Assembly: GCF_011386835.1 (NCBI RefSeq)
Contig: NC_088794.1
Span: forward strand, 3,038,001-3,102,000
DNA length: 64,000 nt
Source: Chrysemys picta bellii
Taxonomy: Eukaryota
Direction of reading: 5' to 3'
Shown: positions 8,281-64,000 of the stretch, piece by piece
Layout: every line of letters begins with the position of its first letter
How positions within the stretch are numbered: position 1 is the stretch's first letter
The notes under the pieces: model-generated
The model's database searches: none
Told to the model about the DNA's origin: nothing
The model's input: only the letters and a program-made list of their open reading frames with translations
Translations under genes and position numbers: made by a program

Positions 8281-9155
8281 GACAGACACACCAGTGCAGA
8301 CTATCTTAATTCAAATTGAAGCCTCGCATCTAGCTCTTTGTCTTAAGCAGATTCCTGGCCCCAAATTTAATGTTGATTAAGAGTGTCTACACTGATTTAA
8401 CTAGATCTGGTTTTAAAGTCAGATTGGTTAAAATTGGGCAGCTTTGAAGACAGAGAGCTGCCTATTATAATCTGTGTGGCACTAGCCCTGTGGAGCCTTA
8501 GTCATTGATCACAGCTCATGGGGCCAGGCACAGTACAAACAGAACCAAGAGCAGCTCCCTGACTCAATAATTTCATTTTGGGCCCTTTGGCTTCTAGTCC
8601 CAGCTCTGGAAGGGGAATGGTGTCCAGGGGGTTAGAGGAGGGGAGCTGGCAGCCAGGACTCCTGGGTTCTGTCCTAAACTTAATGTGTGTGCTCAGAGCG
8701 CAATTATTTCCCTTCCCTGTGCCTCAGTTTACTGTGGAGGGAAGGGCAGTAGGGGAGTCAGCCCACAAAGCACACCCAGACCTCTGCATGAGAGAAACCC
8801 GCTAAGAACAGAGAAAGGTACATGACTGCCCCTCCCAATGTGTGTGTGGTAGGATACCCCACCTGCTGCAGGGCACATGGGGTGGCTGGGGAGAAGCCCC
8901 TGTGCACCCCCTGTAGGTGTTACATAATCAAGGTTTGTAGGGTGCCAAGGAAGTCCCAGCTTGTCAGCCCTGCTGAGGAGGGGGTGAGGTAGTGGTGCTA
9001 GTGGTCAAGATGGAGGTAGAGTGGCAGAGATCACCCCACACAGCCAGGGGATCCCAATTCCCTCCAGCTGGGGGCAGTGCTGCCCACACCCCAGACACAG
9101 GCTCGACCCTGACAATCTATTTCTCCCTCAGCCTCGGGATCATTTCAAAGCACTT

Positions 9156-38155: not shown

Positions 38156-38806
38156 ATGTCTTCTGCAGGGCTGGAGCTCTTGGGCATGGGGCTATGCATC
38201 TTTGGCTGGCTGGGCTCCATCATCTCCTGTGCCCTGCCCATGTGGAAGGTGACGGCCTTCATCGGCAACAACATCGTGGTGGCGCAGACCATCTGGGAGG
38301 GGCTGTGGATGAATTGCATTGTGCAGAGCACGGGCCAGATGCAGTGTAAGGTCTATGACTCTATGCTGGCACTGCCCCAGGACCTGCAGGCCGCCCGCGC
38401 CCTCATGGTCATCTCGGTGCTGCTGGCCGTGCTGGCCTTGCTGGTGAGCGTCGTGGGCGCCAAGTGCACCAACTGCGTGGAGGACGAAGGCGCCAAGGCG
38501 CGGATCATGATTGTTTCCGGTGCCGTCTTTGTGGTCTCCGGCATCCTCTGCCTCATCCCCGTGTGCTGGTCGGCCAACACCATCATCCGGGACTTCTACA
38601 ACCCGCTGGTGTCTGAGGCCCTGAAGCGGGAGCTGGGGGCGGCGCTATATGTGGGGTGGGCAGCCGCCGCCCTGCTGGTTCTCGGGGGGGCTCTGCTTTG
38701 CTGCTCCTGCCCACCCCGCTCAGAGAGATACCCACCCCGGGTCGGGTACATGGCGGCTGCCAGGTCTGGGGTGGGCAGCGGGGTGGACAAGAGGGACTAC
38801 GTGTGA
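38156..38806 (+). CDS. CLDN9: Claudin-9 (CLDN6/9 clade), 216 aa, CDS in a single exon
   Basis: W-x-GLW-C-C claudin signature and 4 TM segments. [26 protein letters not shown] and the C-terminal RSG..SG.DKRDYV (PDZ motif YV) match recalled CLDN9 better than CLDN6. The ATG sits 2 nt after a splice acceptor (ctcctccag|caATG). Confidence 0.9.
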
Positions 38807-42940: not shown

Positions 42941-42950
42941 NNNNNNNNNN
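42941..42950. other. Assembly gap (10 N)
   Basis: nnnnnnnnnn in the sequence. Confidence 1.
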
Positions 42951-43590
42951 AAATCCCGATCGCCTCCCAGGACCGCGAGAGAAATCCCGATCGCCTCCCA
43001 GGCCGCGAGAGAAATCCCGATCGCCTCCCAGGCCGCGAGAGAAATCCCGATCGCCCCCCAGGCCGCGAGAGAAATCCCGATCGCCCCCAGGCCGCGAGAG
43101 AAATCCCGATCGCCCCCCAGGCCGCGAGAGAAATCCCGATCGCCCCCGAGGCCGCGAGAGAAATCCCGATCGCCCCCGAGGCCGCGAGAGAAATCCCGAT
43201 CGCCCCCGAGGCCGCGAGAGAAATCCCGATCGCCTCCCCGAGGCCGCGAGAGAAATCCCGATCGCCTCCCAGGCCGCGAGAGAAATCCCGATCGCCTCCC
43301 AGGCCGCGAGAGAAATCCCGATCGCCTCCCAGGCCGCGAGAGAAATCCCGATCGCCTCCCAGGCCGCGAGAGAAATCCCGATCGCCCCCGAGGCCGCGAG
43401 AGAAATCCCGATCGCCCCCAAGACGCAGCAGGTCTGGCTCATCTCCCAGGCCGCGAGAGAAATCCCGATCGCCCCCGAGGCCGCGAGAGAAATCCCGATC
43501 GCCCCCCAGGCCGCGAGAGAAATCCCGATCGCCCCCAAGACGCAGCAGGTCTGGCTCATCTCCCAGGCCGCGAGAGAAATCCCGATCTCC
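42951..43590 (+). repeat. Coding 30-bp tandem repeat (RPREKSRSPP), ~19 units, continuing into the gap
   Basis: Unit aggccgcgagagaaatcccgatcgcctccc; two units carry the longer insert agacgcagcaggtctggctcatct (RRSRSGSS). Confidence 0.95.
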
Positions 43591-44970
43591 TGCTAGGTAT
43601 GGCAGTTCCGGCTCTTTTCTGAGATCTAGAGAGAAATCCAGATCTCCCGCAAGGTACGGCATATCCGGCTCGTCTCTAAGACTTCAAGAGAAATCCAGAT
43701 CCACTCCAAGGCGTGGCAGGTCTGGCTCATCCCCAAGACCTCGAGAGAAGCTGGGGGCATCTCCCAGAAGCAGCCGCTCTGGGTCGTCTCCAGAGAGACC
43801 CAAGGGCCCGACGAGGCGTGGCCGGTCCAGCTCTCCCTCCAGAAGGGGGAAGTGGAGATCTTCCCTGCGGCGAGGAAGATCTGGGTCGTCGCCCAGGAGA
43901 ACCCGGTCCCGGTCCATCTCCAGACGAGGCAAATCCAGAGGCTCCCTGCGGAGGGACAGATCCATCTCGTCGCCCGGCAGGAGCCGCTCGAGATCCACCT
44001 CGCGATTCTCCCCGCCGCCGGGAGCGCTCGCCGTCCTCGCCTCGCCGTAGCAGATCCCGCACGCCACCCCCGCCGAGGCCGAGCGGGGTCCTCCCCCCGG
44101 CGCCGCGGCTCCCGCCAGCCCCGCTCCCGCTCCCCACCGAAACTGGATGTCTCCCGCACCCCCGGCCTCTTCCTATCGTGGCCGCTCAAAAGCGTCGCCG
44201 GCCAGGACCCGATCAGGCTCGGGCTCGCCGAAACGAGCCGGGAGGAGGTCCCGCTCGCCGCCGGTGCTGGAGAAATACCCCAAAGTGGGAGCGGCCGACA
44301 AGGCAGCACCAGGAAGAGCTGAAAAGACGTCGCCCGTGGTGGCGGTGCCCATCCGGCGCAGCCCGTCCCGCTCCCCGCCGGCGCCGGATGAGGCCTCCCC
44401 CAAAACCAGGAAAGCCCATTCCCCTGCCCCCAAGATTCACTCCCCGCGGCCGGAGGGGTCCCTGGGGGCGGTGAGGAACGGGGGTCCGGCGCCCGCCTGG
44501 ACCCTGAACTCCTGCCCTGCGGCCCCTGGGGGCTCCCCGCCTGCCGGCCGCCTCCCCCTAGCCAAAGGGCCAGAGAAAGTCAGATCTTCCTCCTCTTCCT
44601 CTTCCTCCTCCTCCTCTGCCTCCCACAAGGTGCCCAGCCCCCTGCCCGCCCCACTCCCGGTGCTGCCCCCCAAGGAGGAAGACAGGGAAGGCCCCAAGGT
44701 CAAGTCGGAGCCGCCAGCCCCGGAGGTGCCCCGGGAGCTGCTAGACAAAGCCCGGAGCGGAGTCCCCAAGCCGCTGGTGCCGCTGCCGGTGCCCCCCCGC
44801 ACCCCGTCCAAAGAGAAGAGGAGCTCGTCCACCTCCTCGTCATCCTCGTCCTCCTCCTCTTCCTCCTCCTCGTCCTCGTCGTCCTCCTCTGACTCCAGCT
44901 CCAGCTCCTCAGAGTCCAGCCACGACTCCCCAGCGAGCAAGGGGCCCGACCTGGAGACGGCGAAGAAAGA
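42951..44970 (+). CDS. SRRM2: SRRM2 giant exon, 3' portion (truncated by the gap; frameshifts at ~42972, 43084, 43235, 44006, 44070, 44160)
   Basis: RPREKSRSPP repeats, then RSGSSP repeats, ending ETAKK-GA|gtgagt. Confidence 0.9.
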
Positions 44971-46471
44971 GTGAGTCCCCCGCAGCTCGGCGCCCCCCCA
45001 CCCAGCTCCCTCCCCCCATTCCTTCTGTCCCAGCCTGGCGCCCCCCCTGCGCGCGGCGCCCCCTGCCCCAGTTTCTCATGCTCCCCCTGTCCGCAGGCCC
45101 CCGAGCCCGGTGCAGAAAGAGCCGGCCCGCGAGGGGCGTCCCCTGGAGGTGGCCAAGCGGAAACGCCGTTCCCGAAGCTCCAGCAGCTCCAGCAGCAGCT
45201 CATCGTCGTCCTCCTCCTCGTCTTCGTCCTCGTCTTCCTCCTCGTCCTCGTCCTCCTCTTCCTCGTCCTCTTCCTCCTCCTCCTCCTCGTCCTCCTCCTC
45301 CCCCAAGCCGGGGCCCCAGCCGCAGCCAAGGCAGCCCCCAAGAAGCCCTCGCCCGAGCAGAGGCGGTAAGTGTGGAGCGTTGGCCCGGACGCCTGGGTCC
45401 CCGTTCTCCTGGTGGGGGCGGGCTAGCGCAGACCTGAGTTGGGGGGGTGGGGGGGCGCGGGCAGGTGCTGGGTCCCTGTTCTAGGGGTTGGGCATTGCCA
45501 GGCTGGACACCTGGGTCTGTCTGAGGGTGTCTCACCTGCTGTCCCCCCCTCCCCCCACAGCTCCCGGAGTCCCCGGAAGCCGATCGACTCCCTGCGCGAC
45601 TCTCGCTCTCTCAGCTATTCCCCGGCCGAGCGGCGCCGGCCCTCCCCCCCGGAACCCCCTCCGGCCCAGCGGGACCGGCACAGGTAGGTGTCTGCCGGAG
45701 CCCCCCAGGGACCAGCTTGGGAGGGGGGGAACGCTAGGAGGGAAGGGCGAGGGGTGGGGGGGCTGAGGAGCAGGGGAGGGGGGAATCGGGTGCCTGGGAG
45801 GGGAGGTCTTGGGGGGGCCTGTGGGTCAGATCTGGGGGCCCCACTGACCCTCCCCTTACCCGGCGCCCCCCCCTCAGTGACAAACCCTCCCAGAGGAGTC
45901 GAGGAACCAACAGCCGCTCCCCGGCTCGCAAGCGCAGGCGGGAAACGCCCAGCCCCCCCCACGCTGCCCGTCGCCGAGCGTCCCGGTACGAGGGGGCTGA
46001 GACAGGGCTAGATGGGCCCGGGGGGCTGGGAGAGGGCAGCATACTGGGGTAGATTGGCCCATGGGGCTGGGAGAGGGCAGGATACCGGGGTAGATGGGCC
46101 CATGAGGGGGCAAGATACTGGGGTAGATGGGCCCATGAGGGGGCAGGATACCGGGGTAGAAGGGCCCATGGGCCTGAACTGAGAGTGTGGGTGGGGTACT
46201 GGGGTACATGGGCCCGTGGGGCTGATGGGCGGGGTGTGCGGGACAGGACAGGATACATGGGCCCGTGGGGCTGTTCTGGGGGCGGACGGGGGTAAATGGG
46301 CATACGAGGCTGATCAGGAGGGGCAGGGAGGAGGCGGGATACCGGGGTAGATGGGCCCGTGGGACTGAGCCATTGGGGTCTGTGCTCCCCCCTTTCTCCA
46401 CCAGGGGGCAGACCTCTCCCGGTATCCCCTTAATCTCTCTCCCCCTTTCTCTTCTTTTAAGGTCGCCGTAG
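42951..46471 (+). CDS. SRRM2: Serine/arginine repetitive matrix protein 2, 3' part: join(<42951..44970,45097..45365,45561..45683,45878..45985,46462..46471), with apparent single-base indels
   Basis: RS/SP-rich sequence, KEKRSSS..poly-Ser, AKRKRRS..poly-Ser, SRSPRKPIDSLRDSRSLSYSP.ERRRPSP, RKRRRETPSP and the terminal RSP* match the recalled SRRM2 C-terminus; all introns are GT-AG. Confidence 0.95.
45097..45365 (+). CDS. SRRM2: SRRM2 poly-Ser exon (1-nt deficit near 45326)
   Basis: ccgcag|GCCC..AGGCG|gtaagt; 269 nt where 270 is needed to keep frame. Confidence 0.9.
45561..45683 (+). CDS. SRRM2: SRRM2 exon (SRSPRKPIDSLRDSRSLSYSPAERRRPSP)
   Basis: 123 nt, phase 2-2. Confidence 0.95.
45878..45985 (+). 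CDS. SRRM2: SRRM2 penultimate exon (..RSPARKRRRETPSP..)
   Basis: 108 nt, phase 2-2. Confidence 0.92.
46462..46471 (+). CDS. SRRM2: SRRM2 last exon, coding part (R-S-P-stop)
   Basis: cttcttttaag|GTCGCCGTAG. Confidence 0.9.
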
Positions 46472-47664
46472 CCCGTGGGGCTCCGCCCAGCCTCCAGCAG
46501 CAGCGCCCCCTAGCAGGGGCTCCGGCAGCAGCCTCCTCTGTTTCCATTGGCTCCTTCCCTCCCTTCACCTCCCCCTCCCTCATTGGTCGGCGGCTACGTC
46601 CCGCCCCCTTGGCTGCCGGGGCCCCGCCCCGTTGTGACTCGAATCTCGTTTTTTTCCATGTGAGCGTTTCAGTTTTTTCTCTTCTGTGAGTTTTTACCGA
46701 TAAAAAAACCCGACAAAACTTCTGTGTTTTGAGACAAGTGGGGGGGAGGGGGGAGTTGGGTTGATTTAGACAAAAAATGGTTCAAGAGGAAAACACAAAA
46801 AAAGGGGGGGTGGGATTTTGGGGTGGGAGGCGGAAAAAGCCGGCTTGATTTAGCATTTCTCAGTCGGGGGGCAGGGAGCTGGCGAGAGGCTGCTTCTCCG
46901 GCGGAGACCCGTATGGCATGTGCCCCCCTACATTTCTGAGGTGCATTGCTCCTCTTTGAAGCACCCCCAATTTTCAGGGGGTGAATCCCCCCAAATTTCG
47001 GGTTTAGATCACCCCCTCTTTGGCAGCCCCCAAATTTTAGGGGGTAGATTGCTCCCTTTTCACTGGCAGCAGCGCTAGGAGCTGTCCTTGCTAGCACCCC
47101 AAATGCCATATCCCCCTTCCCAGCCCCCCCCAAATTACTCTAAGAGGGGGCGAGGAAGTGATTTGAGTTTCCCTTGCCATTAAAATGTGGGGGAGCGCCT
47201 CTTTGGGCTCACCAGGGGGGTTCAGCTATCGATATTTGGGGGGATGTTAGCAGCAGCCCCCTGAGTTCTGGGGCATAATCTGCCCTCCTCTTAGGAGCCA
47301 CCCCCAAAATTAGACTCTGATTTAGGGGAGCGTATGCGCTTTCAGTTAAATTTGGGGCACCTCTTCGGATGCATGGAGGGGGCAGAGTTGGGGTTCCCTG
47401 GACCCCCCAATAAAGGGACTCTTTGGGGGGGGCTCTTTGTAGCCCATAACAGCAGTTGGGGGCACCGTCAGCAGAGCCCAGAGCATAGCGGTTTTGGAGC
47501 GGGAGTGGCTGGGCTGCAGGCCCCACGGTTTGGGGGGGCGAGCCGGCTGAGAAACCCTAAATCGAAGGGCAGATTTGGGGGTGGGGGGGCAGAGAATTTT
47601 CTTCACGTTTCTTAAAAGCGTTTGATTTTTTTTTAATCTGTACAGCGAGGAGACTTTTCTGTGA

Positions 47665-47670
47665 AATAAA
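47665..47670 (+). terminator. SRRM2 polyadenylation signal
   Basis: AATAAA about 1.2 kb after the stop, following U-rich 3'UTR sequence (tttttttaatctgtacag). Confidence 0.7.
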
Positions 47671-48029
47671 CGACGAAAAGCAGAACCTGCGCCCCCTCCC
47701 TTTCCTCGGGTGCCTGCGGCTTTCGGGGGGCGGGGGGCCCCCAAACCTCCTCCCACCCCCGGCGGCCTGTCAGTAACGGGGGGAGGCTCCCCCGCGGGGA
47801 CAGCGGGGGCAGGAACGAGCCGGGGAGGGATCCCTGCGTAACGGGGGGCTGGGGGGCCTCACTCCAGTGAACACCTTTATGGAGCGACAGGCGAACCTGC
47901 TGCTGTCATATCGGCAACGGCCACAAGAGGGCGGCACTGCCCTTGGCAGGGGGACCGGGATGTACCAAGTCCAGCCCTGTCTCCCATGTGTTGGTACAGG
48001 CTGGAATGTCCCATTTCATTACCCCCCCC

Positions 48030-49805
48030 TGCAGCTCTGCCGGTGCCCCTCACTCCCGACCCGCAGCCCCTGCCAGCCCCCTCATCCCCCCCCCCAGCTC
48101 TGTCCCCCCCCAGCTCTGCCGGTGCCCCTCACTCCCCACCCGCAGCTCCTGCTAGCCCAGCCCTGGGCCCCCCTGCAGCTCTGCCGGTGCCCCTCACTCC
48201 CGACCCGCAGCCCCCTGCCAGCCCAGCCCTGCCCCCCCCAGCTCTGCCAGTGCCCCTCACTCCCGACCCGCAGCCCCCTGCCAGCCCAGCCCTGCCCCCC
48301 CAGCTCTGCCAGTGCCCCTCACTCCCGACCCGCAGCCCCTGCCAGCCCAGCCCTGGTCTCCCCCAGCTCTGCCAGTGCCCCTCACTCCCGACCCGCAGCC
48401 CCTGCTAACCCAGCCCTGGGCTCCCCCCCCAGCTCTGCCGGTGCCCCTCACTCCCCACCCGCAGCCCCTGCCAGCCCAGCCCTGCCCCCCCAGCCCTGCC
48501 GGTGCCCCTCACTCCCGACCCGCAGCCCCTGCCAGCCCAGCCCTGCCCCCCCCCCCAGCTCTGCCGGTGCCCCTTACTCCCGACCCGCAGCCCCTGCCAG
48601 CCCCCTCGTCCCCCCCCCAGCCCTGTCCCCCCCCCAGCTCTGCCGGTGCCCCTCACTCCCCACCCGCAGCCCCTGCCAGCCCAGCCCAGCCCCCCCCCGC
48701 TCTGCCGGTGCCCCTCACTCCCAACCCGCAGCCCTTGCCAGCCCCCTCGTCCCCCCCCCCCAGCTCTGCCGGTGCCCCTCACTCCCGACCCGCAGCCCCT
48801 GCCAGCCCCCTCGTCCCCCCCCAGCTCTGCCCGTGCCCCTCACTCCCGACCCGCAGCCCCTGCTAGCCCAGCCCTGCCCCCCCCCCAGCTCTGCCGGTGC
48901 CCCTCACTCCCGACCCGCAGCCCCTGCCAGCCCCCTCGTCCCCCCCCAGCTCTGCCCGTGCCCCTCACTCCCGACCCGCAGCCCCTGCTAGCCCAGCCCT
49001 GCCTCCCCCAGCTCTGCCGGTGCCCCTCACTCCCGACCCGCAGCCCCTGCCAGCCCAGCCCTGCCTCCCCCAGCTCTGCCCGTGCCCCTCACTCCCGACC
49101 CGCAGCCCCTGCTAGCCCAGCCCTGCCTCCCCCAGCTCTGCCGGTGCCCCTCACTCCCGACCCGCAGCCCCTGCTAGCCCAGCCCTGCCTCCCCCAGCTC
49201 TGCCCGTGCCCCTCACTCCCGACCCGCAGCCCCTGCTAGCCCAGCCCCTGCCTCCCCCAGCTCTGCCGGTGCCCCTCACTCCCGACCCGCAGCCCCTGCT
49301 AGCCCAGCCCTGCCTCCCCCAGCTCTGCCGGTGCCCCTCACTCCCGACCCGCAGCCCCTGCTAGCCCAGCCCTGCCTCCCCCAGCTCTGCCGGTGCCCCT
49401 CACTCCCGACCCGCAGCCCCTGCCAGCCCAGCCCTGCCTCCCCCAGCTCTGCCCGTGCCCCTCACTCCCGACCCGCAGCCCCTGCTAGCCCAGCCCTGCC
49501 TCCCCCAGCTCTGCCGGTGCCCCTCACTCCCGACCCGCAGCCCCTGCTAGCCCAGCCCTGCCTCCCCCAGCTCTGCCGGTGCCCCTCACTCCCGACCCGC
49601 AGCCCCTGCCAGCCCAGGCCTGCCTCCCCCAGCTCTGCCCGTGCCCCTCACTCCCGACCCGCAGCCCCTGCTAGCCCAGCCCTGCCTCCCCCAGCTCTGC
49701 CGGTGCCCCTCACTCCCGACCCGCAGCCCCTGCTAGCCCAGCCCTGCCTCCCCCAGCTCTGCCGGTGCCCCTCACTCCCGACCCGCAGCCCCTGCCAGCC
49801 CAGGC
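48030..49805. repeat. Sat-A array (~28 units; distal half highly homogeneous)
   Basis: C-rich strand on +. Confidence 0.95.
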
Positions 49806-50966
49806 CTGGGCTCCCTTTCCTCACAGGGCTCTGCCCGTGCCCCTCGATGCTCTACCTCTGCTGTGGGGTAGGCAGGTGGTTACAGCGGTTTGTGCGCCGT
49901 GGGGCAGGGCTCAGCAGGGGGGTGCTCTTTCCTGGCAGTCAGGACTGGCCCCAGTGTGACACTCGGGGGCGCTGTGGGGCAGGGAGCAGGGTGAAGCTAA
50001 GCTGAAGCGTTTCCTTTGAAGCTGTCCCTGCGCCCCGGAGTCTGGGTCCAGCCCCAAACCAGGGGCTTCTGTTCTGCCTCCCTCGCTCCCCGTCAGCCCC
50101 AGAATGGGTTTTCCCTCCCACTTTGTGTTGCCAACTTCTCTGCAGCGTCGCTGTGCAGCTGTTCCCCTGCTGCCACACCCCAGAGGTGGCTGCATCTCAG
50201 CCACAGGTGAGTCGTCCCTGTGCAGTGTTATATGTGGCTGTTCCGTAGCCGCTCTGCCCCGGAGGTGGTTGCATCTCAGTGTCAGGTGAGCCATCCCTGT
50301 GTGGTGTTACAGGTGGCTTTTCCCCTGCTGCCCCACCCCAGAGGCGGCTGCATCTCTGTGCCAGACGAATGAATTTGAGGAGGCAGGTGATGAGTTTTTG
50401 TCTTTTAATGCAGCAGTTTATTTGAATACAGACGCTGGCTGAGGTACAGTCCCGAGCTCCCTCCTCCCCGGCTTTGTCCAGATAACAACCTTCTATAGCT
50501 GTTTTGCCCCAGCAAAGTTTTGAAAACCTGCCCCCCCCCCCCCCCCCCGGGCCGGGTTCTGAGCAGACCCTGGGTGCTCCCCGAGTTTGGGTTCCTGATA
50601 CCTTCATTTCTCCTGCTCCTGAATCCCCTAGAATCTCAGGGGGATTTTCACCCCCAAGTCCCGGACTCCTGGGTCCCTCCATTCTGACACCCCGGTTTCC
50701 CTTGGCTCCTTGCTCTTCTCCGATGCCTGGGTCCTGCCACTGGACCCGGACTCCTGGGTCCCCTTCCACCAATGCTCCCCGCCTCTGGCGCTGGGAACCA
50801 CTCCCCACGTTTCTCCTCCCAGACCCTGAGCTCTTGGATTCCTGGCTCCCACCCCCCTCCTCTCAGCCCCGGGCCGGACTCCTGGGTTCCCTTCCCCCAC
50901 CCTCTCCGGCGCCCGGCCTCTTGGGTCCCCAGCCCCTGCGGCGCGGCGGTCTCTCGTCCCGTTGCT

Positions 50967-51054
50967 CACAGTACACTCATCCATAAAGTAGGAAACACTA
51001 CACGGGACGCGGCGGTTTAGTAGTGCTTTCTACTTTATGGAGGAGTGCACTGTC
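50967..51054 (-). ncRNA. MIR142: mir-142 family pre-miRNA (5p 51039-51019 CAUAAAGUAGAAAGCACUACU; 3p 51002-50980 UGUAGUGUUUCCUACUUUAUGGA)
   Basis: Minus strand reads GACAGUGCACUCCUCCAUAAAGUAGAAAGCACUACU-AAACCGCCGCGUCCCG-UGUAGUGUUUCCUACUUUAUGGAUGAGUGUACUGUG. Both arms are identical to recalled mature miR-142, the flanking stem is conserved and the loop is divergent. Confidence 0.97.
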
Positions 51055-52061
51055 CGTATCGGTGCCAGTCCTCGGGCGGCGTCCCCCGGCGGGCACTGCC
51101 TGTGCCAGGCTCCGGCTGCCCCATCCCTCCCCTGCCCTTCCCTCAGCTCCCACTGCCTGCGGTCCCCGGCTGGGTAACGAACAGGGAGCCACAAGCAGAG
51201 GGGGCCGGTTCAGGGACCCTGTGTTGGATTGTCAGAACCCAGGTCCCCGCTCTGATCCGCTAGATCCGCTCCCCTCCCAGAGCTGGGAGAGAACCCAGGC
51301 ATCCGGGCTTCCAGCCCTCTCTGCTCTAACCAGTAGCCCCCACTCTCCTGCCAGAGCTTTAGTTCGGTATAATTAACAACAAAATGATGACTCATATGGT
51401 GATTGTTATAAGCTAACGAGCACTTATTAATTGAGACTGATTTAACAGCGACCGGTTACAATGATCACTGAATTATTAATTCTCTAATTACTATATTAAA
51501 CTAAAGATCCCGTAGCCACAGCCCGTTGCCAATTATCAAACGAGTCCTCACGATCTCCAAGGTGGATCCGCTGCTCGTTAGCTGGCGAGGAAAGATTTAG
51601 GTGCCATTTAACGCTGCAGACCTCAGGGTCTTGATTGAATTACTCGTTAGAAAATGGGGATTAATGACTAAATACTATTCTTAAGTGACTAATAATTCTA
51701 CAGTTCTGACCAATTGTTAATGTTCGTTTCTGGCTGCAAAAAGGATTTGCTAGGCTGCAGATAAATCGGTGTGAAAGGGGGAATTCGTGGAAGCATTGAC
51801 AGCCCGCTAGCAGCAGCGCCGTCTCATTGCCTAGGCCCTGGCTCATGCTTGCAAACGTAATCGCTCCGTTCCTAATTTGACAGCGGCCACTTGCACCTTC
51901 CCGTGCCGCCGGCTGCGGGAGACGGACCGAGCCGAGACTAGAGCTTCCGCGGGGGGAGGAAACGTCATTTTAGTCGAGGAAACTAACTCGGGAGGATCGG
52001 CGCAGCGAGCAACTATTTGATAGTTGGCAAATAAGGCAAGAAATAAAAATCAGTAAGTAAC

Positions 52062-52495
52062 CACTAGTCTCCACTCCCCTCCCAGAGCTGGGAGAGAACC
52101 CAGGAGTCCTGGCTCCCAGCCCGCCCTGCTCTAACCACTAGACCCCACTCCCCTCCCAGAGCCGGGGAGAGAACCCAGGAGTCCTGGCTCCCAGCCCCTC
52201 CTGCTCTAACCACTAGACCCCACTCCCCTCCCAGAGCCGGGGAGAGAACCCAGGAGTCCTGGCTGCCAGCCCCTCCTGCTCTAACCACTAGACCCCACTC
52301 CCCTCCCAGAGCCGGGGAGAGAACCCAGGAGTCCTGGCTCCCAGCCCCCCCGTTCTAACCACTAGACCCCACTCCCCTCCCAGAGCCGAGGAGAGAACCC
52401 AGGAGTCCTGGCTCCCAGCCCCCCACGTTCTAACCACTAGACCCCACTCCCCTCCCAGAGCCGGAGAGAGAACCCAAGAGTCCGGCCTCCCAGCC
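52062..52495 (-). repeat. Sat-B SINE-head tandem (~6 units)
   Basis: Reverse complement of the unit at 285-918. Confidence 0.9.
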
Positions 52496-52518: not shown

Positions 52519-53225
52519 CTGTGCCCTGTATCCAGCTCATAGGTGTGGGGGTCAAGTGAGCTGCTTCCTGATGTTAGATGCTGGGGGGGGGGAGACCCCC
52601 AAATCCTTGTTTGCTGGTTGGGAGAAGAGGGGCTCGGAGCCTGTACCCCCAGTTACTGCCCCCTGCAGTGATCGGGGCAGACCCCTGAGAGGAAGAGGTG
52701 GGTGGAGGGGCGAAGCAGCAGGAGGGATCCCAGACCAAGGGACCCGAGAGGAGAAGAAGGAGGTGCTCTGGGACTTGGCATCCCTGCACCCCAGAATCGG
52801 GGCCCGGGAAGGATCCCGCCCCTGGCCGTGGGGGAAGAGGGAGCAGGCGCCATTTTGCTGTTGCATAAACCACTGCGCGGGTTTGAAACAACTTCCCCTC
52901 CTGGAGGGGCGCAGCAGGCACCAGACAGCCCAGCGACCCCCCCACCCCCAGCACAGGGGACACTGAGGCACAGAGAGAGAGAACCCAGGAGTCCTGGTTC
53001 CCAGCCCCCCTGCTCTGACCATTAGCCGCCACTCTCCTCCCGGAGCTGGGGAGAAAACCCAGGAGTCCTGGCTCCCAGCCCCCCCTGCTCTGACCACCAG
53101 ACCCCACTCCCCTCCTGGAGCCGTGGAGAGAACCAAGGAGTCCTGCGTGGCCATAGGGTGAGAAACCCACCTGTGTCCGTGGCGGGGGACGGGGGGCTCC
53201 GGTCAGCAACCTGCAGAGGAGAGAG
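52519..53225 (-). ncRNA. Putative spliced 5' exons of the pri-mir-142 host transcript (exon 1 ~53225-53171; exon 2 52580-52519)
   Basis: Donors CACAG|gtgggt (53171) and CACAG|gtaagg (52519), acceptor ccccccag| (52581), downstream of a TATA-like box; inferred only. Confidence 0.4.
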
Positions 53226-53574: not shown

Positions 53575-54062
53575 CGGTGCCCCTGAACCGCAGCCCCCTG
53601 CTAGCCGAGCCCCCCCCCCCCAGCTCTGCCGGTGCCCCTCACTCCTGACCCCCAGCCCAGCCCTGGGCTCCCCCCAGCTCTGCCGGTGCCCCTCACTCCC
53701 GACCCGCAGCCCCTGCCAGCCCAGCCCTGCCCCCCAGCTCTGCTGGTGCCCCTCACTCCTGACCCCCAGCCCAGCCCTACCCCGCCCCCCAGCTCTGCCG
53801 GTGCCCCTCACTCCCGACCCGCAGCCCCTGCCAGCCCAGCCCCCCCAGCTCTGCTGGTGCCCCTCACTCCTGACCCCCAGCCCAGCCCTGCCCCCCCAGC
53901 TCTGCCGGTGCCCCTCACTCCCGATCCCCAGCCCCTGTTAGCCGAGCCCTGTCCCCCCCCAGCTCTGCCGGTGCCCCTCACTCCCGACCTGCAGCCCCTG
54001 CCAGCCCAGCCCTGCCCCCCCCAGCTCTGCCGGTGCCCCTCACTCCCGACCTGCAGCCCCTG
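53575..54062. repeat. Sat-A array
   Basis: C-rich strand on +. Confidence 0.93.
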
Positions 54063-54564
54063 CGATCCCAGGCGGGAGTGGGCTTTGGGGGGTTAGAGCC
54101 GGGGAAGCTGGAGCCAGGACTCCTGGGTTCTCTCCCCAGGGGCAGTCCGAGGGGGTCAGTGGATTGAGGCTGTCCTGGGACAATGGGGGGGGTGCTGGGG
54201 CTGGTCCCCTTTGTGGCCCCCATCATGTGCTCAGAGGCGCTGGGCAAAAGGGGGCACCCACAGTGATCCCCCCCCATAGACAACCAAGTTCGCTGACTCC
54301 CACCCCACCCCCGCCCAACAGCAGCTCAGGCCTCTGGGCATAGTGGAGCTGGGGTGGGGGCAGCAGAAAAGGCACCTCCCCCCCCCCGGCTAGCTCCCAG
54401 TGCCCCCCTGCATCAACCCCTCCTGGCTCCCTGCCCCCACCTGCCGCCAGGCCCTGCCCTCCCCTCCCCCGCACGCTCGTTAATGCCGTGACCTTAATTT
54501 TAGTGGTTAGGGCGCATCTGGTGCAAGTGTGAATGGAAAATTCATAATGTTTTGTGGAAGGGTG

Positions 54565-55372
54565 GGGGCAGGGCTGGGCTGGCAGGGGCTACGGGTCGGG
54601 GGTGAGGGGCACCGGCAGAGCTGGGGGGGGCAGGGCTGGGCTGGCAGGGGCTGCGGGTCGGGAGTGAGGGGCACCGGCAGAGCTGGGGGGGGGCAGGGCT
54701 GGGCTGGCAGGGGCTGCGGGTCGGGAGTGAGGGGCACCGGCAGAGCTGGGGGGGGCAGGGCTGGGCTGGCAGGGGCTACGGGTCGGGAGTGAGGGGCACC
54801 GGCAGAGCTGGGGGGAGCCCAGGGCTGGGCTGGCAGGGGGCTGCGGGTCGGGAGTGAGGGGCACCGGCAGAGCTGGGGGGAGCCCAGGGCTGGGCTAGCA
54901 GGGGGCTGAGGGTCGAGAGTGAGGGGCACCGGCAGAGCTGGGGGGGGCAGGGCTGGGCTAGCAGGGGCTGCGGGTTGGGAGTGAGGGGCACCGGCAGGGC
55001 TGGGCTCGCAGGGGGCTGCGGGTCGGGAGTGAGGGGCACCGGCAGAGCTGGGGGGGAGCCCAGGGCTGGGCTGGCAGGGGCTGCGGGTCAGGAGTGAGGG
55101 GCACCGGCAGAGCTGGGGGGGGGGCAGGGCTGGGCTAGCAGGGGCTGCGGGTCGGGAGTGAGGGGCACCGGCAGAGCTGGGGGGCGCAGGGCTGGGCTCG
55201 CAGGGGGCTGCGGGTCAGGAGTGAGGGGCACCGGCAGAGCTGGGGGGGGGCAGGGCTGGGCTAGCAGGGGCTGCGGGTCGGGAGTGAGGGGCACCGGCAG
55301 AGCTGGGGGGGGGCAGGGCTGGGCTGGCAGGGGCTGCGGGTCGGGAGTGAGGGGCACCGGCAGAGCTGGGGC
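54565..55372. repeat. Sat-A array (inverted relative to the previous one)
   Basis: G-rich strand on +. Confidence 0.93.
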
Positions 55373-55761: not shown

Positions 55762-56010
55762 TGAACCCAGGAGTCCTGGCTCCCAGCCCCCCCCCCCCAC
55801 TCTAACCCACTAGACCCCACTCCCCTCCCAGAGCTGGGGAGAGAACCCAGGAGTCCTGGCTCCCAACCCCGCCCCCCCCCCACTCTAACCCACTAGACCC
55901 CAGTCCCCTCCCAGAGCTGGGGAGAGAACCCAGGAGTCCTGGCTCCCCCCCCGCCCCAACCCACTAGACCCCACTCCCCTCCCAGAGCCGGGGGGAGAAC
56001 CCAGGAGTCC
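55762..56010 (-). repeat. Sat-B SINE-head tandem (3 units)
   Basis: Same family as above. Confidence 0.88.
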
Positions 56011-56714
56011 TGAGGCTCTGGATGTGGGCCTGTCCTGCAGGGGCCCCGAGCAGTGGGATGGGGCTTATGCCCTTATATGGGTACAAGTGGCCCCTGGGGG
56101 GAGGAGCCCCCCCCCCCCCCCCCAGAGGCGCCAGGATGTGGCTGAGTTGCGACTTCTGCTATTTTCAGGGCCTCTCGGTTTGCAGGCACCCGGGGGCGGG
56201 GGGGGGGGGGGGGGGCGCCTGCAGGGGCCGGGTGGGGGAGGGGATGGAGGGGCTCTGTGGGGGGAGGATGGGGGACCGTGGCATGGGGTGTTTGTCCCCC
56301 AATGTCTGGGTTTAGGCACATGGTGCCCTGGGATCCCCTCCATTCATTGAGCCCTGACACCCCCCCACCCCCCCCCGAGACAGTGGCTGGTGCATGAGCC
56401 AGCCCCAGCCACCCCCCTTGCCCCCCTCCAGTAGGGGGCAGCACTGCTCCCCGACAGGTTGCCCCCCGACCGTGCCCCCCAATCCCAATCACAGCCCCCC
56501 ACCCCAGAGAACACAACGGGCGCAGGGCAGCCGGGGAGAACCACACAACCCCTCCCCCCGGCCCCCGCTCTGGACTTTTCCATGACGCCACCGATTCGAG
56601 ACCGCGCCCAACGGACCCGCCCCCCCGCCCACCAGCACGGCGCTGCTGCCTGCCCCGAACCACAGAGCAGTGCCGAGAAGGCCGGAAACTCAGCCCTGCA
56701 AATATAGAAACAGC

Positions 56715-57005
56715 CGCAGCTCTGCCGGTGCCCCTCACTCCTGACCCACAGCCCCCTGCCAGCCCAGCCCTGCCCCCTCACAGCTCTGCTGGTGCCCCTC
56801 ACTCCCGATCGGCAGCCCCTGCCAGCCCAGCCCTGCCCCCCCCAGCTCTGCCGGTGCCCCTCACTCCCGACCCGCAGCCCCTGCTAGCCCAGCCCTGCCT
56901 CCCACAGCTCTGCCGGTGCCCCTCACTCCCGACCTGCAGCCCCTGCCAGCCCAGCCCTGCCCCCCCAGCTCTGCCGGTGCCCCTCAGTCCCGACCCGCAG
57001 CCCCC
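56715..57005. repeat. Sat-A array
   Basis: C-rich strand on +. Confidence 0.9.
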
Positions 57006-59314: not shown

Positions 59315-59966
59315 TATCTTAATCCACGGTACGCCCACAGCTTGAATACTGCGTGCAGTTCTGGTCGCCCCGTCTCCAAAAAGATCTATTGGAGTTGAAT
59401 AAGGTGTAGAGAAGGGCCACAACAGTGATGAAGGGCATGGAACGGCTTCCGTATGAGAGATTAAAAAAACTGGGACTGTTCATCTTGGAAAAGAGACGAC
59501 TACGAGGGGATATGATACAGGTCTATAAAATCCTGACTGGTGTATGGAGAAAGTGAATAAGGAAATATTAGTTACCTCATCTCATAACACAAGAACTAGA
59601 GGTCACCCAATGACATTAATAGGCAGCAGGTTTAAAACAAACCAAAGGAAGTATTTCTTCACACAACGCACAGTCAACCTGTGGAACTCCTTGCCAGAGG
59701 ATGTTGTAAAGGCCAAGACTATAACAGGGTTCAAAAAGGAACTAGATAAGTTCATGGAGGATAGGTCCATCAATGGCTATTAGCCAGGATGGTGTCCCTA
59801 GCCTCTGTTTGCCAGAAGCTGAGAATGAGCGATAGGGGATGGGTCACTGGCTGATTCCCTGTTCTGTTCATTCCCTCTGGGGCACCTGGCATTGGCCACT
59901 GTTGGAAGACGGGACACTGGGCTAGATGGGGTCTGATGCACTATGGCTGTTTTTATGCTCTTATGT
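59315..59966 (+). mobile_element. 5'-truncated CR1 LINE (turtle PsCR1-like 3' end)
   Basis: RT C-terminus (..[54 protein letters not shown]..), CR1 3'UTR and ttatg-type tail; TGTAC at both junctions. Confidence 0.95.
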
Positions 59967-60854
59967 ACAAATGAATTATAATAATTAAAATGTTTAGTAC
60001 AGAAACTTCCCCGGCTTATGACCTCTCAAGATGGCGCCGATGTGAGATAACGGCCTTGGCAAATGCTGCATTTTAAAAATCTTGGCCTACTAGCAAACGT
60101 AAATATATAAGAGTTTTCCAGGCAAGCCTGGAGCAAAGTCACTAAACCACAGTCCAACCAACAAATGTTCCTTTAGCAACGTGCCCCTCCCGTCTCCCTC
60201 CCCCGCCCCCCCATGCATCGTCGTGGGCCGTGGTCAGCGGAGACCCAGAGGTACATTCGCATGAGTTCACTTCCCCACCCTGGCGGGTGAGGGGGGAAAA
60301 GGCACCTCGCTCTGACTGCTGTTTGTCGTGCCTCCGTTCGCTCCAACGCTCCGTCCCCGATGGCCCTGCGCCGTCACCTGCCACTGTGACCTCTGCGAGT
60401 CGGTCTCCTGAGGTCCCGCCAGCTCTGTGATTTCAGCTCTCAGCGGGGGAACCTCGCTGCTGGTGCAGGCTGGGCCGTCTCTTCCACCCAAACACTGGCC
60501 CGCAGCAGGTCTAAGCCCTTCGACCTGCTTATCCTTGATTGCAGCTCTGGTGGTCACTTAATAAACCAAAAAACTCTCCCTGGAGCCTCATCAACTTTCT
60601 CCTTAAACCAGGGAGAGGGACGGTCAAACGGTGCTGGAGTCTCTCAGACAGAGCCTGCACCACCAAGCAAAACACCTGTTCCCTCCCGCTCCCTCTCCCC
60701 TAGGGTCTGTCAGCCAAAGCCCCTGCTTAGCGAGTGCAGGTCAGTTGGGGGGTGACCAGTGCTAAATTTGTTCTGCAAAAGTTGTTGGGGATCAAGCAAT
60801 TTTCTTTTACTTTCATCACTGATGCGGCCAAGTCCAAAGGCAGCGGGGTTCTGA

Positions 60855-61352
60855 CCTGCTGGGCCCAGAGGTGCCGGGGCTGTGAACGGCCGGGCCCAGA
60901 GGTGCCGGGGCTGTGAACGGCCAGGCCCAGAGGTGCCGGGGCTCTGACCTGCCGGGCCCAGAGGCGCCGGGGCTGTGAACGGCCGGGCCCAGAGGCGCCG
61001 GGGCTCTGACCTGCCGGGCCCAGAGGCGCCGGGGCTGTGAATGGCCGGGCCTAGAGGCACTGGGGCTCTGACCTGCCGGGCCCAGAGGCGCCGGGGCTGT
61101 GAACGGCCGGGCCTAGAGGCGCCGGGGCTCTGACCTGCCGGGCCCAGAGGTGCCGGGGCTGTGAACGGCTGGGCCCAGAGCTGCCGGGGCTCTGACCTGC
61201 CGGGCCCAGAGCTGCCGGGGCTCTGACCTGCCGGGCCCAGAGGCGCCGGGGCTGTGAACGGCTGGGCCCAGAGCTGCCAGGGCTCTGACCTGCCGGGCCC
61301 AGAGGCGCCGGGGCTCTGACCTGCCGGGCCCAGAGGCGCCGGGGCTGTGAAC
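60855..61352. repeat. 31-bp GC-rich minisatellite (~16 units, two alternating 7-bp variants)
   Basis: gccgggcccagaggcgccggggct followed by gtgaacg or ctgacct. Confidence 0.92.
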
Positions 61353-63194
61353 TGGCACAAATGAAGCACTGAGGGTGACCCCCTCAATCGGGACAGGCTG
61401 AGCAGTTCTGCTGCCCTTTCCTCATACGCTACGGATAACACCATTGCATTCCCCCCGCATTCAACATTTGTATTGAAGCTCATGTTAAAATGCTCCCAGA
61501 CCCAGAGCGTGTCTGTACAGCCGGGTATGAGGCTCAACTTATGCAAAATTGCCCATTAACAGTCATCAACTACACATAGCACATACTCCGCGCTAGCCCA
61601 GATTTCGGGGAATGAACGGGACGCTGCGGCCGCGTGTTCGGGTGCATCACTCTCACCACAGCAAGCGGAGCTGGTGGCAAGCAAACCGAGCCCTGAGGGC
61701 TCGTCGTTCGGTAACGGAGAATTGAGGTTAGGTTGTGCCTCAGCCAATACAATCCCCCAGAGAAGTGCATTGACTTTGTGACACCCGCCAACACGGCGCA
61801 TTTGGGCAACGCCGCGCGCTACCTAGGCAGTGTGGGAGCGGTCGTGTAAATGCAGCCGGGGCCTGATGCCTTTCCCAGCGCAGCACTTGCTGTCGGGGAG
61901 AGCGCATGATGCAGCGTAACTATGAAATGAGGCCGCGCTGACGGGGTCAGAAAACCCAACGGCGGGTGGGCGGGAGCGAGTCTGTGGGTCACACTTTTCA
62001 GACCCGGTGTCCCCTTTCAGGTACAGGTGTTTCATCACATGCTTTCCAAGCGCAGATTAACGGTTCACGTTCCATTCAAATTGCCGCCGACGAAACTGGC
62101 AACTAGTTGACCACTGGGAGGGGGTGATGGGGAATTCACGGGGGGACCCCAGGGCCGGGAGGTGGCAGGAGCCGGGAGGTGGCTAGCCGGAGACCGGAGC
62201 TACCTTTTGCAGAGCACCTGGAGCTCCCAGCTGGGTTCAGTATGGTGGGGGCTTGGCTGGGCTGGCCCCTGGTTTCAGCTTCACGCCCCCCGCCCCGTCC
62301 ATGCGAACGCAAGGCCAGCCAGCACCGGGTGGCTTCTCAGTTGTTCCCTGGTGAGATGAAATGGGCCGTTCCTGTCACGTTGGTATGTGGCCGCTGCCTG
62401 CCTCAGTTTCCCTCTGGCCTTTGCGGTGCCCAGAGGGCGCCCGCTGCTCCTGGCTGGCACTGGAGTGCGTCCCATGGGGCTGGCGGGGCCGTGACGGAGC
62501 TGGGCGTGATCCCCCCTCAGCTTGCCAGAGGGTCCCGAGTGACAAGGTTGGGGGGTGGTGATGGAGGGATTTCCGTGGCCCAGTTCCTGTCCGTGGACGA
62601 GACGCTCCCCTCAGCCGGATTCTCTACCTCACAGAGATTGGGGTGGGGGGGAGGCGCTGTTTGCCGTGTGGCTAAAATGTGACCCCCCCCCACACACACC
62701 CCAGGCATGTTCGGGCTTGAGCCGGGGCAGGGGAGGGAGGGCTGAGACCCGGCCGGGATGTGGGGGGTGCTGGAGTCTGAGCCGGGGAGGTTCCCACACC
62801 ATGGATGAGGCAGGGCTGGGGGGCTTGATTTCCCCATGTGACCCCCCCCACATTAACCCCCCTCGGTGGGGTAGCCCCCCCTTGTAACCCACCCACGACC
62901 ACATGGCCCCACATTGACCCATTGGGCGCCTGCTCCCGCCTCCCTCCCTGCCCCATTGGCCCAGCCGTTACCCCATATGACCTCTTGACCCCAAATTGAC
63001 ATTTACTTCTGGTGACCTGAAGCCTTCCTGACCCCATGGTGACCTCTTGTGACCCCACAGTGCCCCGTTGTTACCCCATGTGACCTCATTTGAGCCCCTT
63101 TGGACCAGATTCCCCCATCCCCCCGGGTCTCCCAGCTCTGTCTGCAGATCGAGGGGTGGGGACAGACTCAGAATCAGGGTTAACAGTGGGGGCT

Positions 63195-64000
63195 GTGCCA
63201 TAGGGGAGCCACGGGGCACCGCGGTATGAGTGGTGGGAATGGGGGACCCGGTGCCATAGGGGAGCCACGGGGCACCCCGGTATGAGTGGTGGGAATGGGG
63301 GACCCGGTGCTATAGGGGAGCCGCGGGGCACCGCGGTATGAGTGGTGGGAATGGGGGACCCGGTGCCATAGGGGAGCCACGGGGCACCCCGGTATGAGTG
63401 GTGGGAATGGGGGACCCGGTGCTATGAGGGAGCCGTGGGGCACCCCGGTATGAGTGGTGGGAATGGGGGACCCGGTGCTATAGGGGAGCCCTGGGGCACC
63501 CCAGTATGAGTGGTGGGAATGGGGGACCCGGTGCCATGGGGGAGCCGCGGGGCACCCCCGTATGAGTGGTGGGACTGGGGGACCTGGTGCTACAGGGGAG
63601 CCGCGGGGCACCCCGGTATGAGTGGTGGGAATGGGGGACCCGGTGCGATAGGGGAGCCGCGGGGCACCCCGGTATGAGTGGTGAGAATGGGGGACCCGGT
63701 GCTATGAGGGAGCCGTGGGGCACTCCGGTATGAGTGGTGGGAATGGGGGACCCGGTGCTATGAGGGAGCCGTGGGGCACCCCGGTATGAGTGGTGGGAAT
63801 GGGGGACCCGGTGCTATGAGGGAGCCGTGGGGCACCCCGGTATGAGTGGTGGGAATGGGGGACCCAGTGCTATAGGGGAGCCCTGGGGCACCCCAGTATG
63901 AGTGGTGGGAATGGGGGACCCAGTGCTATAGGGGAGCCCTGGGGCACCCCAGTATGAGTGGTGGGAATGGGGGACCCGGTGCCATGGGGGAGCCGCGGGG
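63195..64000. repeat. 56-bp minisatellite (~14 units, runs off the window end)
   Basis: ggggcaccccggtatgagtggtgggaatgggggacccggtgctataggggagccgc. Confidence 0.95.

What the first reader, a model, noticed from the sequence alone, without database searches (positions are those of the whole stretch)
50967..51054. An intact mir-142 hairpin in a 16p13.3-like neighbourhood: probable second paralogue lost in mammals
Seen: both mature arms match miR-142 exactly as recalled, the lower stem is conserved (GACAGUGCA..UGUACUGUG) and the loop is different and GC-rich, the pattern of an old gene under selection rather than a recent copy. Known: mammalian MIR142 is single-copy at 17q22 near TSPOAP1/SUPT4H1/RNF43, none of which is seen here; miR-142 is a dominant haematopoietic miRNA; 16p13 and 17q share 2R paralogy. 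Inference: a retained ohnologue next to SRRM2, doubling miR-142 dosage in this lineage. It may already be listed as a second paralogue in curated miRNA sets, which I cannot check.
Basis: partly seen in the sequence, partly recalled or inferred. Interest (0 to 1): 0.78.

Follow-up and report, generated by a model that had tools for sequence, protein, structure and literature searches.

The report
Turtle's second miR-142 gene copy
This is a real, intact gene for the blood-cell microRNA miR-142 in a turtle, lying beside SRRM2. It is most likely the second ancient copy that mammals lost, and microRNA curators have already catalogued that copy for other vertebrates, so it is a sound but ordinary find.

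Summary
Window 50968-51052, minus strand, matches the Rfam mir-142 model at 98.5 bits (E 6e-20). It folds into a 35-bp-class pri-miRNA stem (-52.8 kcal/mol, z -7). Both mature arms are unchanged, and 8 of its 11 differences from the consensus lie in the loop.

The neighbourhood is 16p13.3-like. The hairpin lies 3.3 kb past the poly(A) signal of SRRM2, whose 3' exons were confirmed by homology. Claudin-9 lies across a 10-N gap.

Peterson et al. 2022 and MirGeneDB already record two 2R-derived Mir-142 paralogues in the jawed-vertebrate ancestor. Both are kept in coelacanth and alligator; human keeps only the 2-alpha copy. In a pig contig SRRM2 and ELOB abut tail to tail, with no mir-142 trace.

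Two things were not testable. One is whether this turtle also has the 17q22-type copy. 

The turtle copy may be missing from MirGeneDB 2.1, whose painted-turtle expression table has no Mir-142 pair. Interest is low.

The parts
50968..51052 (-). mir-142 precursor (Rfam RF01896, full-length match)
   Evidence: 98.5 bits, E 6.3e-20; 74/85 identical to the family consensus.
51019..51039 (-). miR-142-5p arm (CAUAAAGUAGAAAGCACUACU)
   Evidence: Read from the alignment. Identical to the consensus and to the isomiR sequences quoted in PMC2762519.
50980..51002 (-). miR-142-3p arm (23 nt, identical to the consensus)
   Evidence: Alignment; isomiR sequences.
51003..51018 (-). Terminal loop: diverged (8 of 11 variable positions changed) and GC-rich
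   Evidence: loop GC 0.80.
50955..51066 (-). Extended pri-miRNA stem: 11 + 12 + 9 bp with two single-base interruptions, flanked by single-stranded segments
   Evidence: MFE -52.8 kcal/mol, z -7.0.
50961..50964 (-). CNNC motif (CAAC) 16-19 nt 3' of the 3p end, the usual SRSF3/Drosha-assisting position
   Evidence: Counted by eye on the sequence printed. This is an inference from the known motif rule.
50404..50422 (-). Two minus-strand poly(A) signals (ATTAAA, AATAAA) about 550 nt downstream of the hairpin; candidate end of the primary transcript
   Evidence: Candidate only; no RNA evidence.
51800..51999 (-). Small CpG-rich patch (20 CpG, o/e 1.08) 0.75-0.95 kb upstream of the hairpin in unique sequence; candidate promoter
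   Evidence: Candidate only.
44147..46471 (+). SRRM2 C-terminal exons (NCBI model of 444 aa), convergent with the hairpin
   Evidence: One search gives the gene call; exon 45427-45684 hits SRRM2 short isoforms, E 6.6e-8. Alignment A1 is.
47602..47670 (+). Conserved end of the SRRM2 3'UTR with AATAAA at 47665; the hairpin lies 3.3 kb beyond it
   Evidence: 79% identity over 72 nt to the pig contig L005 8666-8737, which carries its AATAAA at 8732.
42941..42950 (.). 10-N assembly gap separating the claudin-9/GREP1/PKMYT1 side from the SRRM2/mir-142 side
38156..38806 (+). Claudin-9(-like) single-exon gene
   Evidence: named claudin-9 or claudin-9-like in more than 10 turtle species; Pfam PMP22_Claudin, 6.6e-30.
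48025..49808 (.). 62/79-bp satellite array between SRRM2 and the hairpin
52058..52495 (.). 75-bp SINE-head tandem array upstream of the hairpin
   Evidence: Same kind as earlier notes s1-318425 and s1-329992.

Best explanation
This is a functional mir-142 gene on the minus strand. It is most likely the '2-beta' ohnologue created by the second vertebrate genome duplication. MirGeneDB 2.1 called that copy Mir-142-P2. By the P2 = 2-alpha, P4 = 2-beta rule it is presumably P4 in version 3.0.

Proposed mechanism. A short independent primary transcript runs on the minus strand. The candidate unit goes from a CpG patch at about 51.9 kb, through the hairpin, to poly(A) signals at about 50.4 kb. Drosha/DGCR8 cuts the 35-bp-class stem, helped by a correctly placed CNNC motif. 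Dicer then releases a duplex whose 5p and 3p strands are letter-for-letter the canonical miR-142-5p and -3p. It would therefore repress the same targets as the 17q22-type gene. It would add dosage or, more likely for a 450-My-old duplicate, a separately regulated source of the same miRNAs.

Shown: the hairpin, unchanged arms, stem geometry, a diverged loop, linkage to the SRRM2 3' end, and absence at that position in pig.

Inferred: transcription, processing, the promoter, the 2-beta assignment, and coexistence with a 2-alpha copy.
For: - Rfam gives 98.5 bits, E 6e-20.
- The fold has z -7.
- All 11 differences from the consensus lie in the loop and the 5' basal stem; none lies in either arm. 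A copy free of selection since 2R could not keep 44 arm bases and the stem intact.
- SRRM2 exons and the conserved 3'UTR end are contiguous with the hairpin. Claudin-9 is nearby.
- Established knowledge: 16p13.3, 17q and 22q are 2R paralogous regions (SOX8/9/10, AXIN1/2, CACNA1H/G/I).
- Peterson et al. 2022 SuppFile3 places Mir-142 on linkage group G, with one copy on 2-alpha and one on 2-beta in the gnathostome ancestor. Coelacanth keeps both; human and elephant shark keep only 2-alpha. SuppFile5 shows alligator expressing both, 23 and 114 reads.
- The MirGeneDB names of the human gene carry a paralogue suffix.
- In pig, SRRM2 and ELOB lie about 0.4 kb apart tail to tail, with no match to the 5p side.
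- Weak hint of transcription: three small libraries of the same species (about 0.2 Gb each, type only guessed as RNA) hold 0.49-0.56 of the sampled words of a 3.5-kb stretch. That is about the size of the proposed 1.5-kb unit.
Against: - No second mir-142 locus could be looked for in this genome.
- No reads could be laid, so neither transcription nor Drosha/Dicer ends are shown.
- No non-mammalian comparator locus was obtained, so the link between the published 2-beta paralogue and the SRRM2 flank is an inference from paralogy, not an observation.
- The painted-turtle (Cpi) block of Peterson's expression table has no Mir-142 pair. Curators therefore knew only one copy in that species, and which one is unknown.
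- In Pelodiscus and Gopherus, no SRRM2 exons or hairpin lie within 10 kb beyond the claudins. The claudin/PKMYT1 adjacency here rests on a scaffold join across a gap.
Confidence: 0.75

Rival explanations
1. It is the only mir-142 gene of this turtle. Either the 17q22-type orthologue was moved next to SRRM2, or the turtle kept the 2-beta copy and lost the 2-alpha one. In both cases there is no extra dosage.
For: The Cpi block of Peterson's SuppFile5 lists no Mir-142 pair, whereas alligator has one. No second locus was seen here.
Against: Every gnathostome tabulated keeps the 2-alpha copy. Turtles' closest tabulated relative, alligator, has both. The old painted-turtle assembly is poor in GC-rich, satellite-flanked regions like this one, which would explain a missed copy. 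Only 734 windows of this genome have notes so far, so silence there means little.
Confidence: 0.13
2. It is a recent lineage-specific duplicate (segmental or retro-copy) of the turtle's canonical mir-142 that landed beside SRRM2. It would not be an old ohnologue.
For: Both arms are identical to the canonical sequence, as a young copy would be. The surroundings are full of SINEs and satellites.
Against: The loop differs from the family consensus at 8 of 11 variable positions, and three basal-stem positions also differ, while no arm base differs. That is the signature of long divergence under selection. The location is in the region paralogous to 17q, as expected for an ohnologue. Related turtle species hold most of the 3.5-kb stretch near-identically (organisms B and C).
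Confidence: 0.05
3. It is a silent relic: the hairpin is intact by chance or recent inactivation, and it is no longer transcribed or processed.
For: No expression evidence could be obtained. The hairpin is hemmed in by satellite arrays.
Against: The arms, stem length and CNNC motif are perfectly preserved after about 450 My if it is the ohnologue. The alligator 2-beta copy is expressed. Libraries of the same species hold about half of the stretch (library type uncertain).
Confidence: 0.05

Closest known systems
Mir-142 2-beta paralogue of MirGeneDB (Mir-142-P2 in release 2.1; Peterson et al. 2022, PMC8789304)
   Same: A second mir-142 gene dating from 2R, retained in some non-mammalian jawed vertebrates (coelacanth, alligator) and absent in human. 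The turtle hairpin lies in the region paralogous to human 17q, as that paralogue should.
   Different: Orthology to those copies was not observed directly, because no alligator or coelacanth locus could be fetched. The painted-turtle block of the 2.1-era expression table shows no pair, so this particular copy may be unlisted.
Human/mouse MIR142 (17q22; Hsa-Mir-142-P2 in MirGeneDB 3.0)
   Same: Identical 5p and 3p arms, the same basal-stem strings, and the same stem length class.
   Different: Different loop (8 changes) and three basal-stem changes. Different chromosomal neighbourhood (SRRM2 flank rather than TSPOAP1/SUPT4H1). The host transcript is not characterised.
Zebrafish mir-142a / mir-142b
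   Same: A vertebrate with two mir-142 genes, both with haematopoietic roles (neutrophil defects in double mutants, as discussed in PMC4860776).
   Different: Whether the zebrafish pair dates from 2R or from the teleost duplication was not examined here. mir-142b differs in its mature sequence (from memory), whereas the turtle arms are unchanged.

Membership tests
mir-142 precursor family (Rfam RF01896 / MirGeneDB MIR-142) | Covariance-model score at or above the curated gathering score over the full model | tested here: met
   98.5 bits against 57, model positions 1-85 of 85, E 6.3e-20.
mir-142 precursor family (Rfam RF01896 / MirGeneDB MIR-142) | Mature 5p and 3p sequences, including seeds, of miR-142 | tested here: met
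   Searches show no difference in either arm. The arms match the isomiR sequences printed in PMC2762519.
mir-142 precursor family (Rfam RF01896 / MirGeneDB MIR-142) | Stable imperfect hairpin with a stem of about 35 bp and single-stranded flanks | tested here: met
   32 pairs plus 2 interruptions, -52.8 kcal/mol, z -7.0.
mir-142 precursor family (Rfam RF01896 / MirGeneDB MIR-142) | Reads from both arms with Drosha/Dicer-type 2-nt offsets (MirGeneDB's expression criterion) | not testable with these tools
Identical arms would in any case not tell two loci apart.
Mir-142 2-beta ohnologue (second paralogue, lost in mammals) | Lies in the paralogon partner of the 17q22 region, not in TSPOAP1/SUPT4H1 synteny | tested here: met
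   SRRM2 3' exons are contiguous with the hairpin and claudin-9 is nearby. That 16p13.3 is the 2R partner of 17q is established knowledge (SOX8/SOX9, AXIN1/AXIN2, CACNA1H/CACNA1G) and was not computed here.
Mir-142 2-beta ohnologue (second paralogue, lost in mammals) | Coexists with a 2-alpha copy in the same genome | not testable with these tools
   No tool searches this vertebrate genome. Earlier notes of the scan mention none.
Mir-142 2-beta ohnologue (second paralogue, lost in mammals) | Absent at the orthologous position in mammals | tested here: met
   In pig contig L005 the SRRM2 poly(A) signal (8732) and the ELOB stop (about 9160, minus strand) are about 0.4 kb apart, and the 12-kb contig has no match to the 5p side. 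This is one mammal only; human was not examined, by rule.
Mir-142 2-beta ohnologue (second paralogue, lost in mammals) | Orthologous hairpin at the same position in other non-mammalian vertebrates (alligator, coelacanth) | tested here: inconclusive
   No such locus could be fetched. Snake SRRM2 fragments are not on record. The Pelodiscus and Gopherus claudin loci do not reach SRRM2.

The most novel reading that the evidence does not exclude
This SRRM2-linked hairpin is the turtle's only mir-142. Turtles would then have kept the 2-beta ohnologue and lost the 2-alpha copy that every other tabulated jawed vertebrate retains, a reciprocal loss. Alternatively, if both copies exist, the 2-beta copy has its own non-redundant expression domain, which would explain 450 My of perfect arm conservation.
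Probability: 0.1. Interest if true: 0.4.

Novelty: new member of a known kind. Interest (0 to 1): 0.2.

Why it matters
miR-142 is among the most abundant haematopoietic microRNAs, and its gene is the most often mutated miRNA gene in blood cancers (PMC13435480). Mammalian work assumes a single locus. Reptiles, like coelacanth and alligator, appear to keep a second, separately placed source of exactly the same mature miRNAs. That bears on how dosage-sensitive miRNA ohnologues are retained or lost. The paralogue class is already catalogued, however. At most, this adds a probably unlisted turtle locus, its precise address (3.3 kb past the SRRM2 3' end, convergent), and the observation that in pig the corresponding interval has collapsed to a 0.4-kb SRRM2/ELOB tail-to-tail junction.

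Tried and rejected
There is therefore no depth, strand, joint or second-locus evidence.
2. Walking from claudin-9 in other turtles. Pelodiscus L001/L003 and Gopherus L004 hold two claudins. They hold no SRRM2 exon and no match to the 5p side within 10 kb.
3. Word search with the poly-Ser SRRM2 exon (44147-44971) returned nothing.
4. A profile of the SRRM2 C-terminus against 1.84 billion representatives returned only 9 short models and no full-length SRRM2. The warthog, garter-snake and cobra fragments are 'not on record' for context look-up.
5. The 365-aa partial product after the gap is not in the collection by exact sequence.
6. Supplements: MirMachine and MirGeneDB 3.0 have none held. The MirGeneDB 2.1 file is cut before the reptile rows.
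7. Paper searches for Mir-142-P4, cpi-/ami-/xtr-mir-142, mir-142 + Chrysemys, and a 16p13/17q paralogon gave nothing usable.
8. Earlier-findings searches for TSPOAP1, SUPT4H1 and RNF43 had no entries.
9. Pfam on presumed PKMYT1 exons found nothing, as the exons are too short. PKMYT1 is named from remembered motifs only.
10. A simple scan for ETS/RUNX/CEBP motifs upstream of the hairpin found nothing persuasive.
11. I did not run a public pattern search with the miRNA arms.

Full report
OBSERVATION. A scan of all 64 kb against Rfam returned only this element: RF01896 at 50968-51052 (-), 98.5 bits against a gathering score of 57, E 6.3e-20, model 1-85 of 85. The plus strand gave its mirror image at 72.9 bits. 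The 112-nt stretch 50955-51066 (-) folds into one long stem of 11 + 12 + 9 pairs with two single-base interruptions and an 18-nt loop. Its energy is -52.8 kcal/mol, against -27.8 +/- 3.6 for shuffles, z -7.0.

Compared with the family consensus, 74 of 85 positions agree. The 11 differences are at positions 8, 11 and 12 in the 5' basal stem and at eight loop positions. None falls in either arm, and loop GC is 0.80. The arms contain the miR-142-5p and -3p isomiR sequences printed in PMC2762519. The only exception is base 1 of the longest 5p variant. A CAAC lies 16-19 nt after the 3p end, where a CNNC motif is expected (read). It did not state the strand, which is minus.

NEIGHBOURHOOD. The window is positions 3,038,001-3,102,000 of contig CM062321.1 (156.6 Mb) of assembly GCA_011386835.2. 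Earlier notes of this scan call the genome a turtle. The claudin encoded at 38156-38806 (+) is identical or at least 90% identical to proteins named claudin-9 or claudin-9-like in more than ten turtle species. From memory of the accession I take the assembly for the painted turtle, but the tools did not name it.

NCBI calls two genes after a 10-N gap (42941-42950). One is a 365-aa partial RS-repeat product (42953-44050). The other is a 444-aa product (44147-46471). The exon at 45427-45684 hits proteins named 'serine/arginine repetitive matrix protein 2 isoform X..' in several mammals and an unnamed coral-snake (Micrurus) protein (best E 6.6e-8). In the alignment, it and the next ORF align with the last two coding exons of SRRM2 (A1).

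A 72-nt block with AATAAA at 47665 is 79% identical to the end of the pig SRRM2 3'UTR. The hairpin therefore lies 3.3 kb beyond the SRRM2 poly(A) signal, on the opposite strand and convergent with it. The link to SRRM2 is in contiguous sequence.

In Pelodiscus and Gopherus, the 10 kb beyond the claudin pair holds no SRRM2 exon. The join may therefore be a rearrangement or a scaffolding artefact. Between 46.5 and 64 kb I saw no protein exon. That stretch holds 62-bp satellite arrays, 75-bp SINE-head arrays and a CR1 tail.

WHAT IS ALREADY KNOWN. The MIR142 review PMC13435480 gives the MirGeneDB 3.0 name of the human gene as Hsa-Mir-142-P2. In release 2.1 it was Mir-142-P1, and in 2.0 plain Mir-142. 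A paralogue suffix on a single-copy human gene means that curators recognise further ancestral copies.

Peterson et al. 2022 (PMC8789304) state this explicitly. In SuppFile3, Mir-142 sits on chordate linkage group G, as one gene before duplication, with one copy on subgenome 2-alpha and one on 2-beta. The last common gnathostome ancestor has two copies and coelacanth has two. Elephant shark and human have only the 2-alpha copy. SuppFile5 gives read counts for both alligator copies, 23 and 114. The Methods give the rule P2 = 2-alpha, P4 = 2-beta. I therefore expect the lost-in-mammals copy to be called P4 in release 3.0, although no held paper uses that name.

The painted-turtle (Cpi), chicken, anole and Xenopus blocks of SuppFile5 list no Mir-142 pair. 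As of release 2.1, only one copy seems to have been annotated in the turtle.

WHICH COPY IS THIS? By established knowledge, 16p13.3 is a 2R partner of 17q (SOX8/SOX9, AXIN1/AXIN2, CACNA1H/CACNA1G, with 22q as a third member). A mir-142 beside SRRM2 is therefore where the 2-beta ohnologue of the 17q22 gene should be. The pattern of change (arms and 3' basal stem frozen, loop replaced) fits an old duplicate under selection on the mature products. It does not fit a young copy or a decaying relic.

A profile of the SRRM2 C-terminus (A2) found an ORF carried on host contigs in metagenome and Logan assemblies. Its sequence is almost identical to the warthog SRRM2 isoform, so I take these contigs for pig, not human. 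In the 12-kb contig L005, the SRRM2 poly(A) signal (8732) and the stop codon of ELOB on the other strand (about 9160) are about 0.4 kb apart. Nothing in the contig matches the 5p side of the hairpin. So in one mammal the interval has no copy and no room for a remnant. In the turtle, ELOB motifs are absent from the 16 kb that follow SRRM2.

WHAT COULD NOT BE SHOWN. Earlier notes of the scan hold no such locus.

Local scripts masked them, or used only the neighbouring 51005-51400, against loci already fetched.

One weak hint remains. Three small libraries of the same species (about 0.2 Gb each, type only guessed as RNA) hold 0.49-0.56 of the sampled words of the 3.5-kb stretch. That is hard to reach with 0.1x genomic coverage. 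It is about the size of the unit suggested by a CpG patch at 51.8-52.0 kb and minus-strand poly(A) signals at 50404 and 50417. This is a lead, not evidence.

MECHANISM AND RIVALS. The most likely reading (0.75) is an independently transcribed, Drosha/Dicer-processed mir-142 gene, the 2-beta ohnologue. It would supply the same mature miRNAs as the canonical gene under its own regulation.

The rivals are:
- It is the sole copy in this turtle, either relocated or kept by reciprocal loss (0.13).
- It is a young duplicate (0.05).
- It is a silent relic (0.05).

Each is separated from the main reading by the whole-genome model scan, by the coordinates of the alligator and coelacanth copies, and by locus-specific RNA reads.

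VERDICT. The turtle locus itself may be unlisted, so I class it as a new member of a known kind, with low interest (0.2).

Noticed in passing
window 42941-46471: SRRM2 is represented only by its C-terminal part. A 10-N gap is followed at once by a partial 365-aa RS-repeat product and a separate 444-aa model. No N-terminal (cwf21) exons were seen upstream. The gene model is truncated or split by the assembly gap.
   Followed up: partly
window 38156-38806; L001 10001-13982; L004 10001-16329: Pelodiscus and Gopherus carry two adjacent claudins here (216 and 213 aa). The window has only the 216-aa claudin-9-like gene by tblastn. The second may be lost, or hidden in the gap.
   Followed up: partly
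window 47602-47670; L005 8666-8737: The last ~70 nt of the SRRM2 3'UTR, including the AATAAA, is 79% identical between turtle and pig. This is an unusually conserved 3'UTR end.
   Followed up: no
L005 8732-9267 (pig host contig in metagenome assembly ERZ13405088): In pig, SRRM2 and ELOB are tail to tail, with about 0.4 kb between the poly(A) signal and the stop codon. In the turtle no ELOB motif occurs within 16 kb after SRRM2, so this tight junction is not shared.
   Followed up: partly
window 48025-49808, 53588-54071, 54564-55371, 56717-57004: Arrays of a 62-bp C-rich satellite recur on both strands around the hairpin and elsewhere in the window (for example 28-36 kb). Pelodiscus has the same satellite at about 70% identity. 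The arrays generate long spurious ORFs ([12 protein letters not shown]...).
   Followed up: partly
window 52058-52495, 52977-53145, 55763-56012: Tandem arrays of 75 bp built from a SINE head (TAACCACTAGACCCCACTCCC...). This is the same kind of minisatellite noted elsewhere in this genome.
   Followed up: no
window 59529-59780: An ORF with the typical CR1 LINE reverse-transcriptase C-terminus (…FFTQRTVNLWNSLPEDVV…) in an AT-richer block at 57.4-60 kb.
   Followed up: no
window 60713-61555 and 63089-64000: Two further tandem-repeat blocks give long repetitive ORFs on the minus strand (FTAPAPLGPAGQSPG... and HRVPHSHHSYRGAP...). They were not characterised.
   Followed up: no
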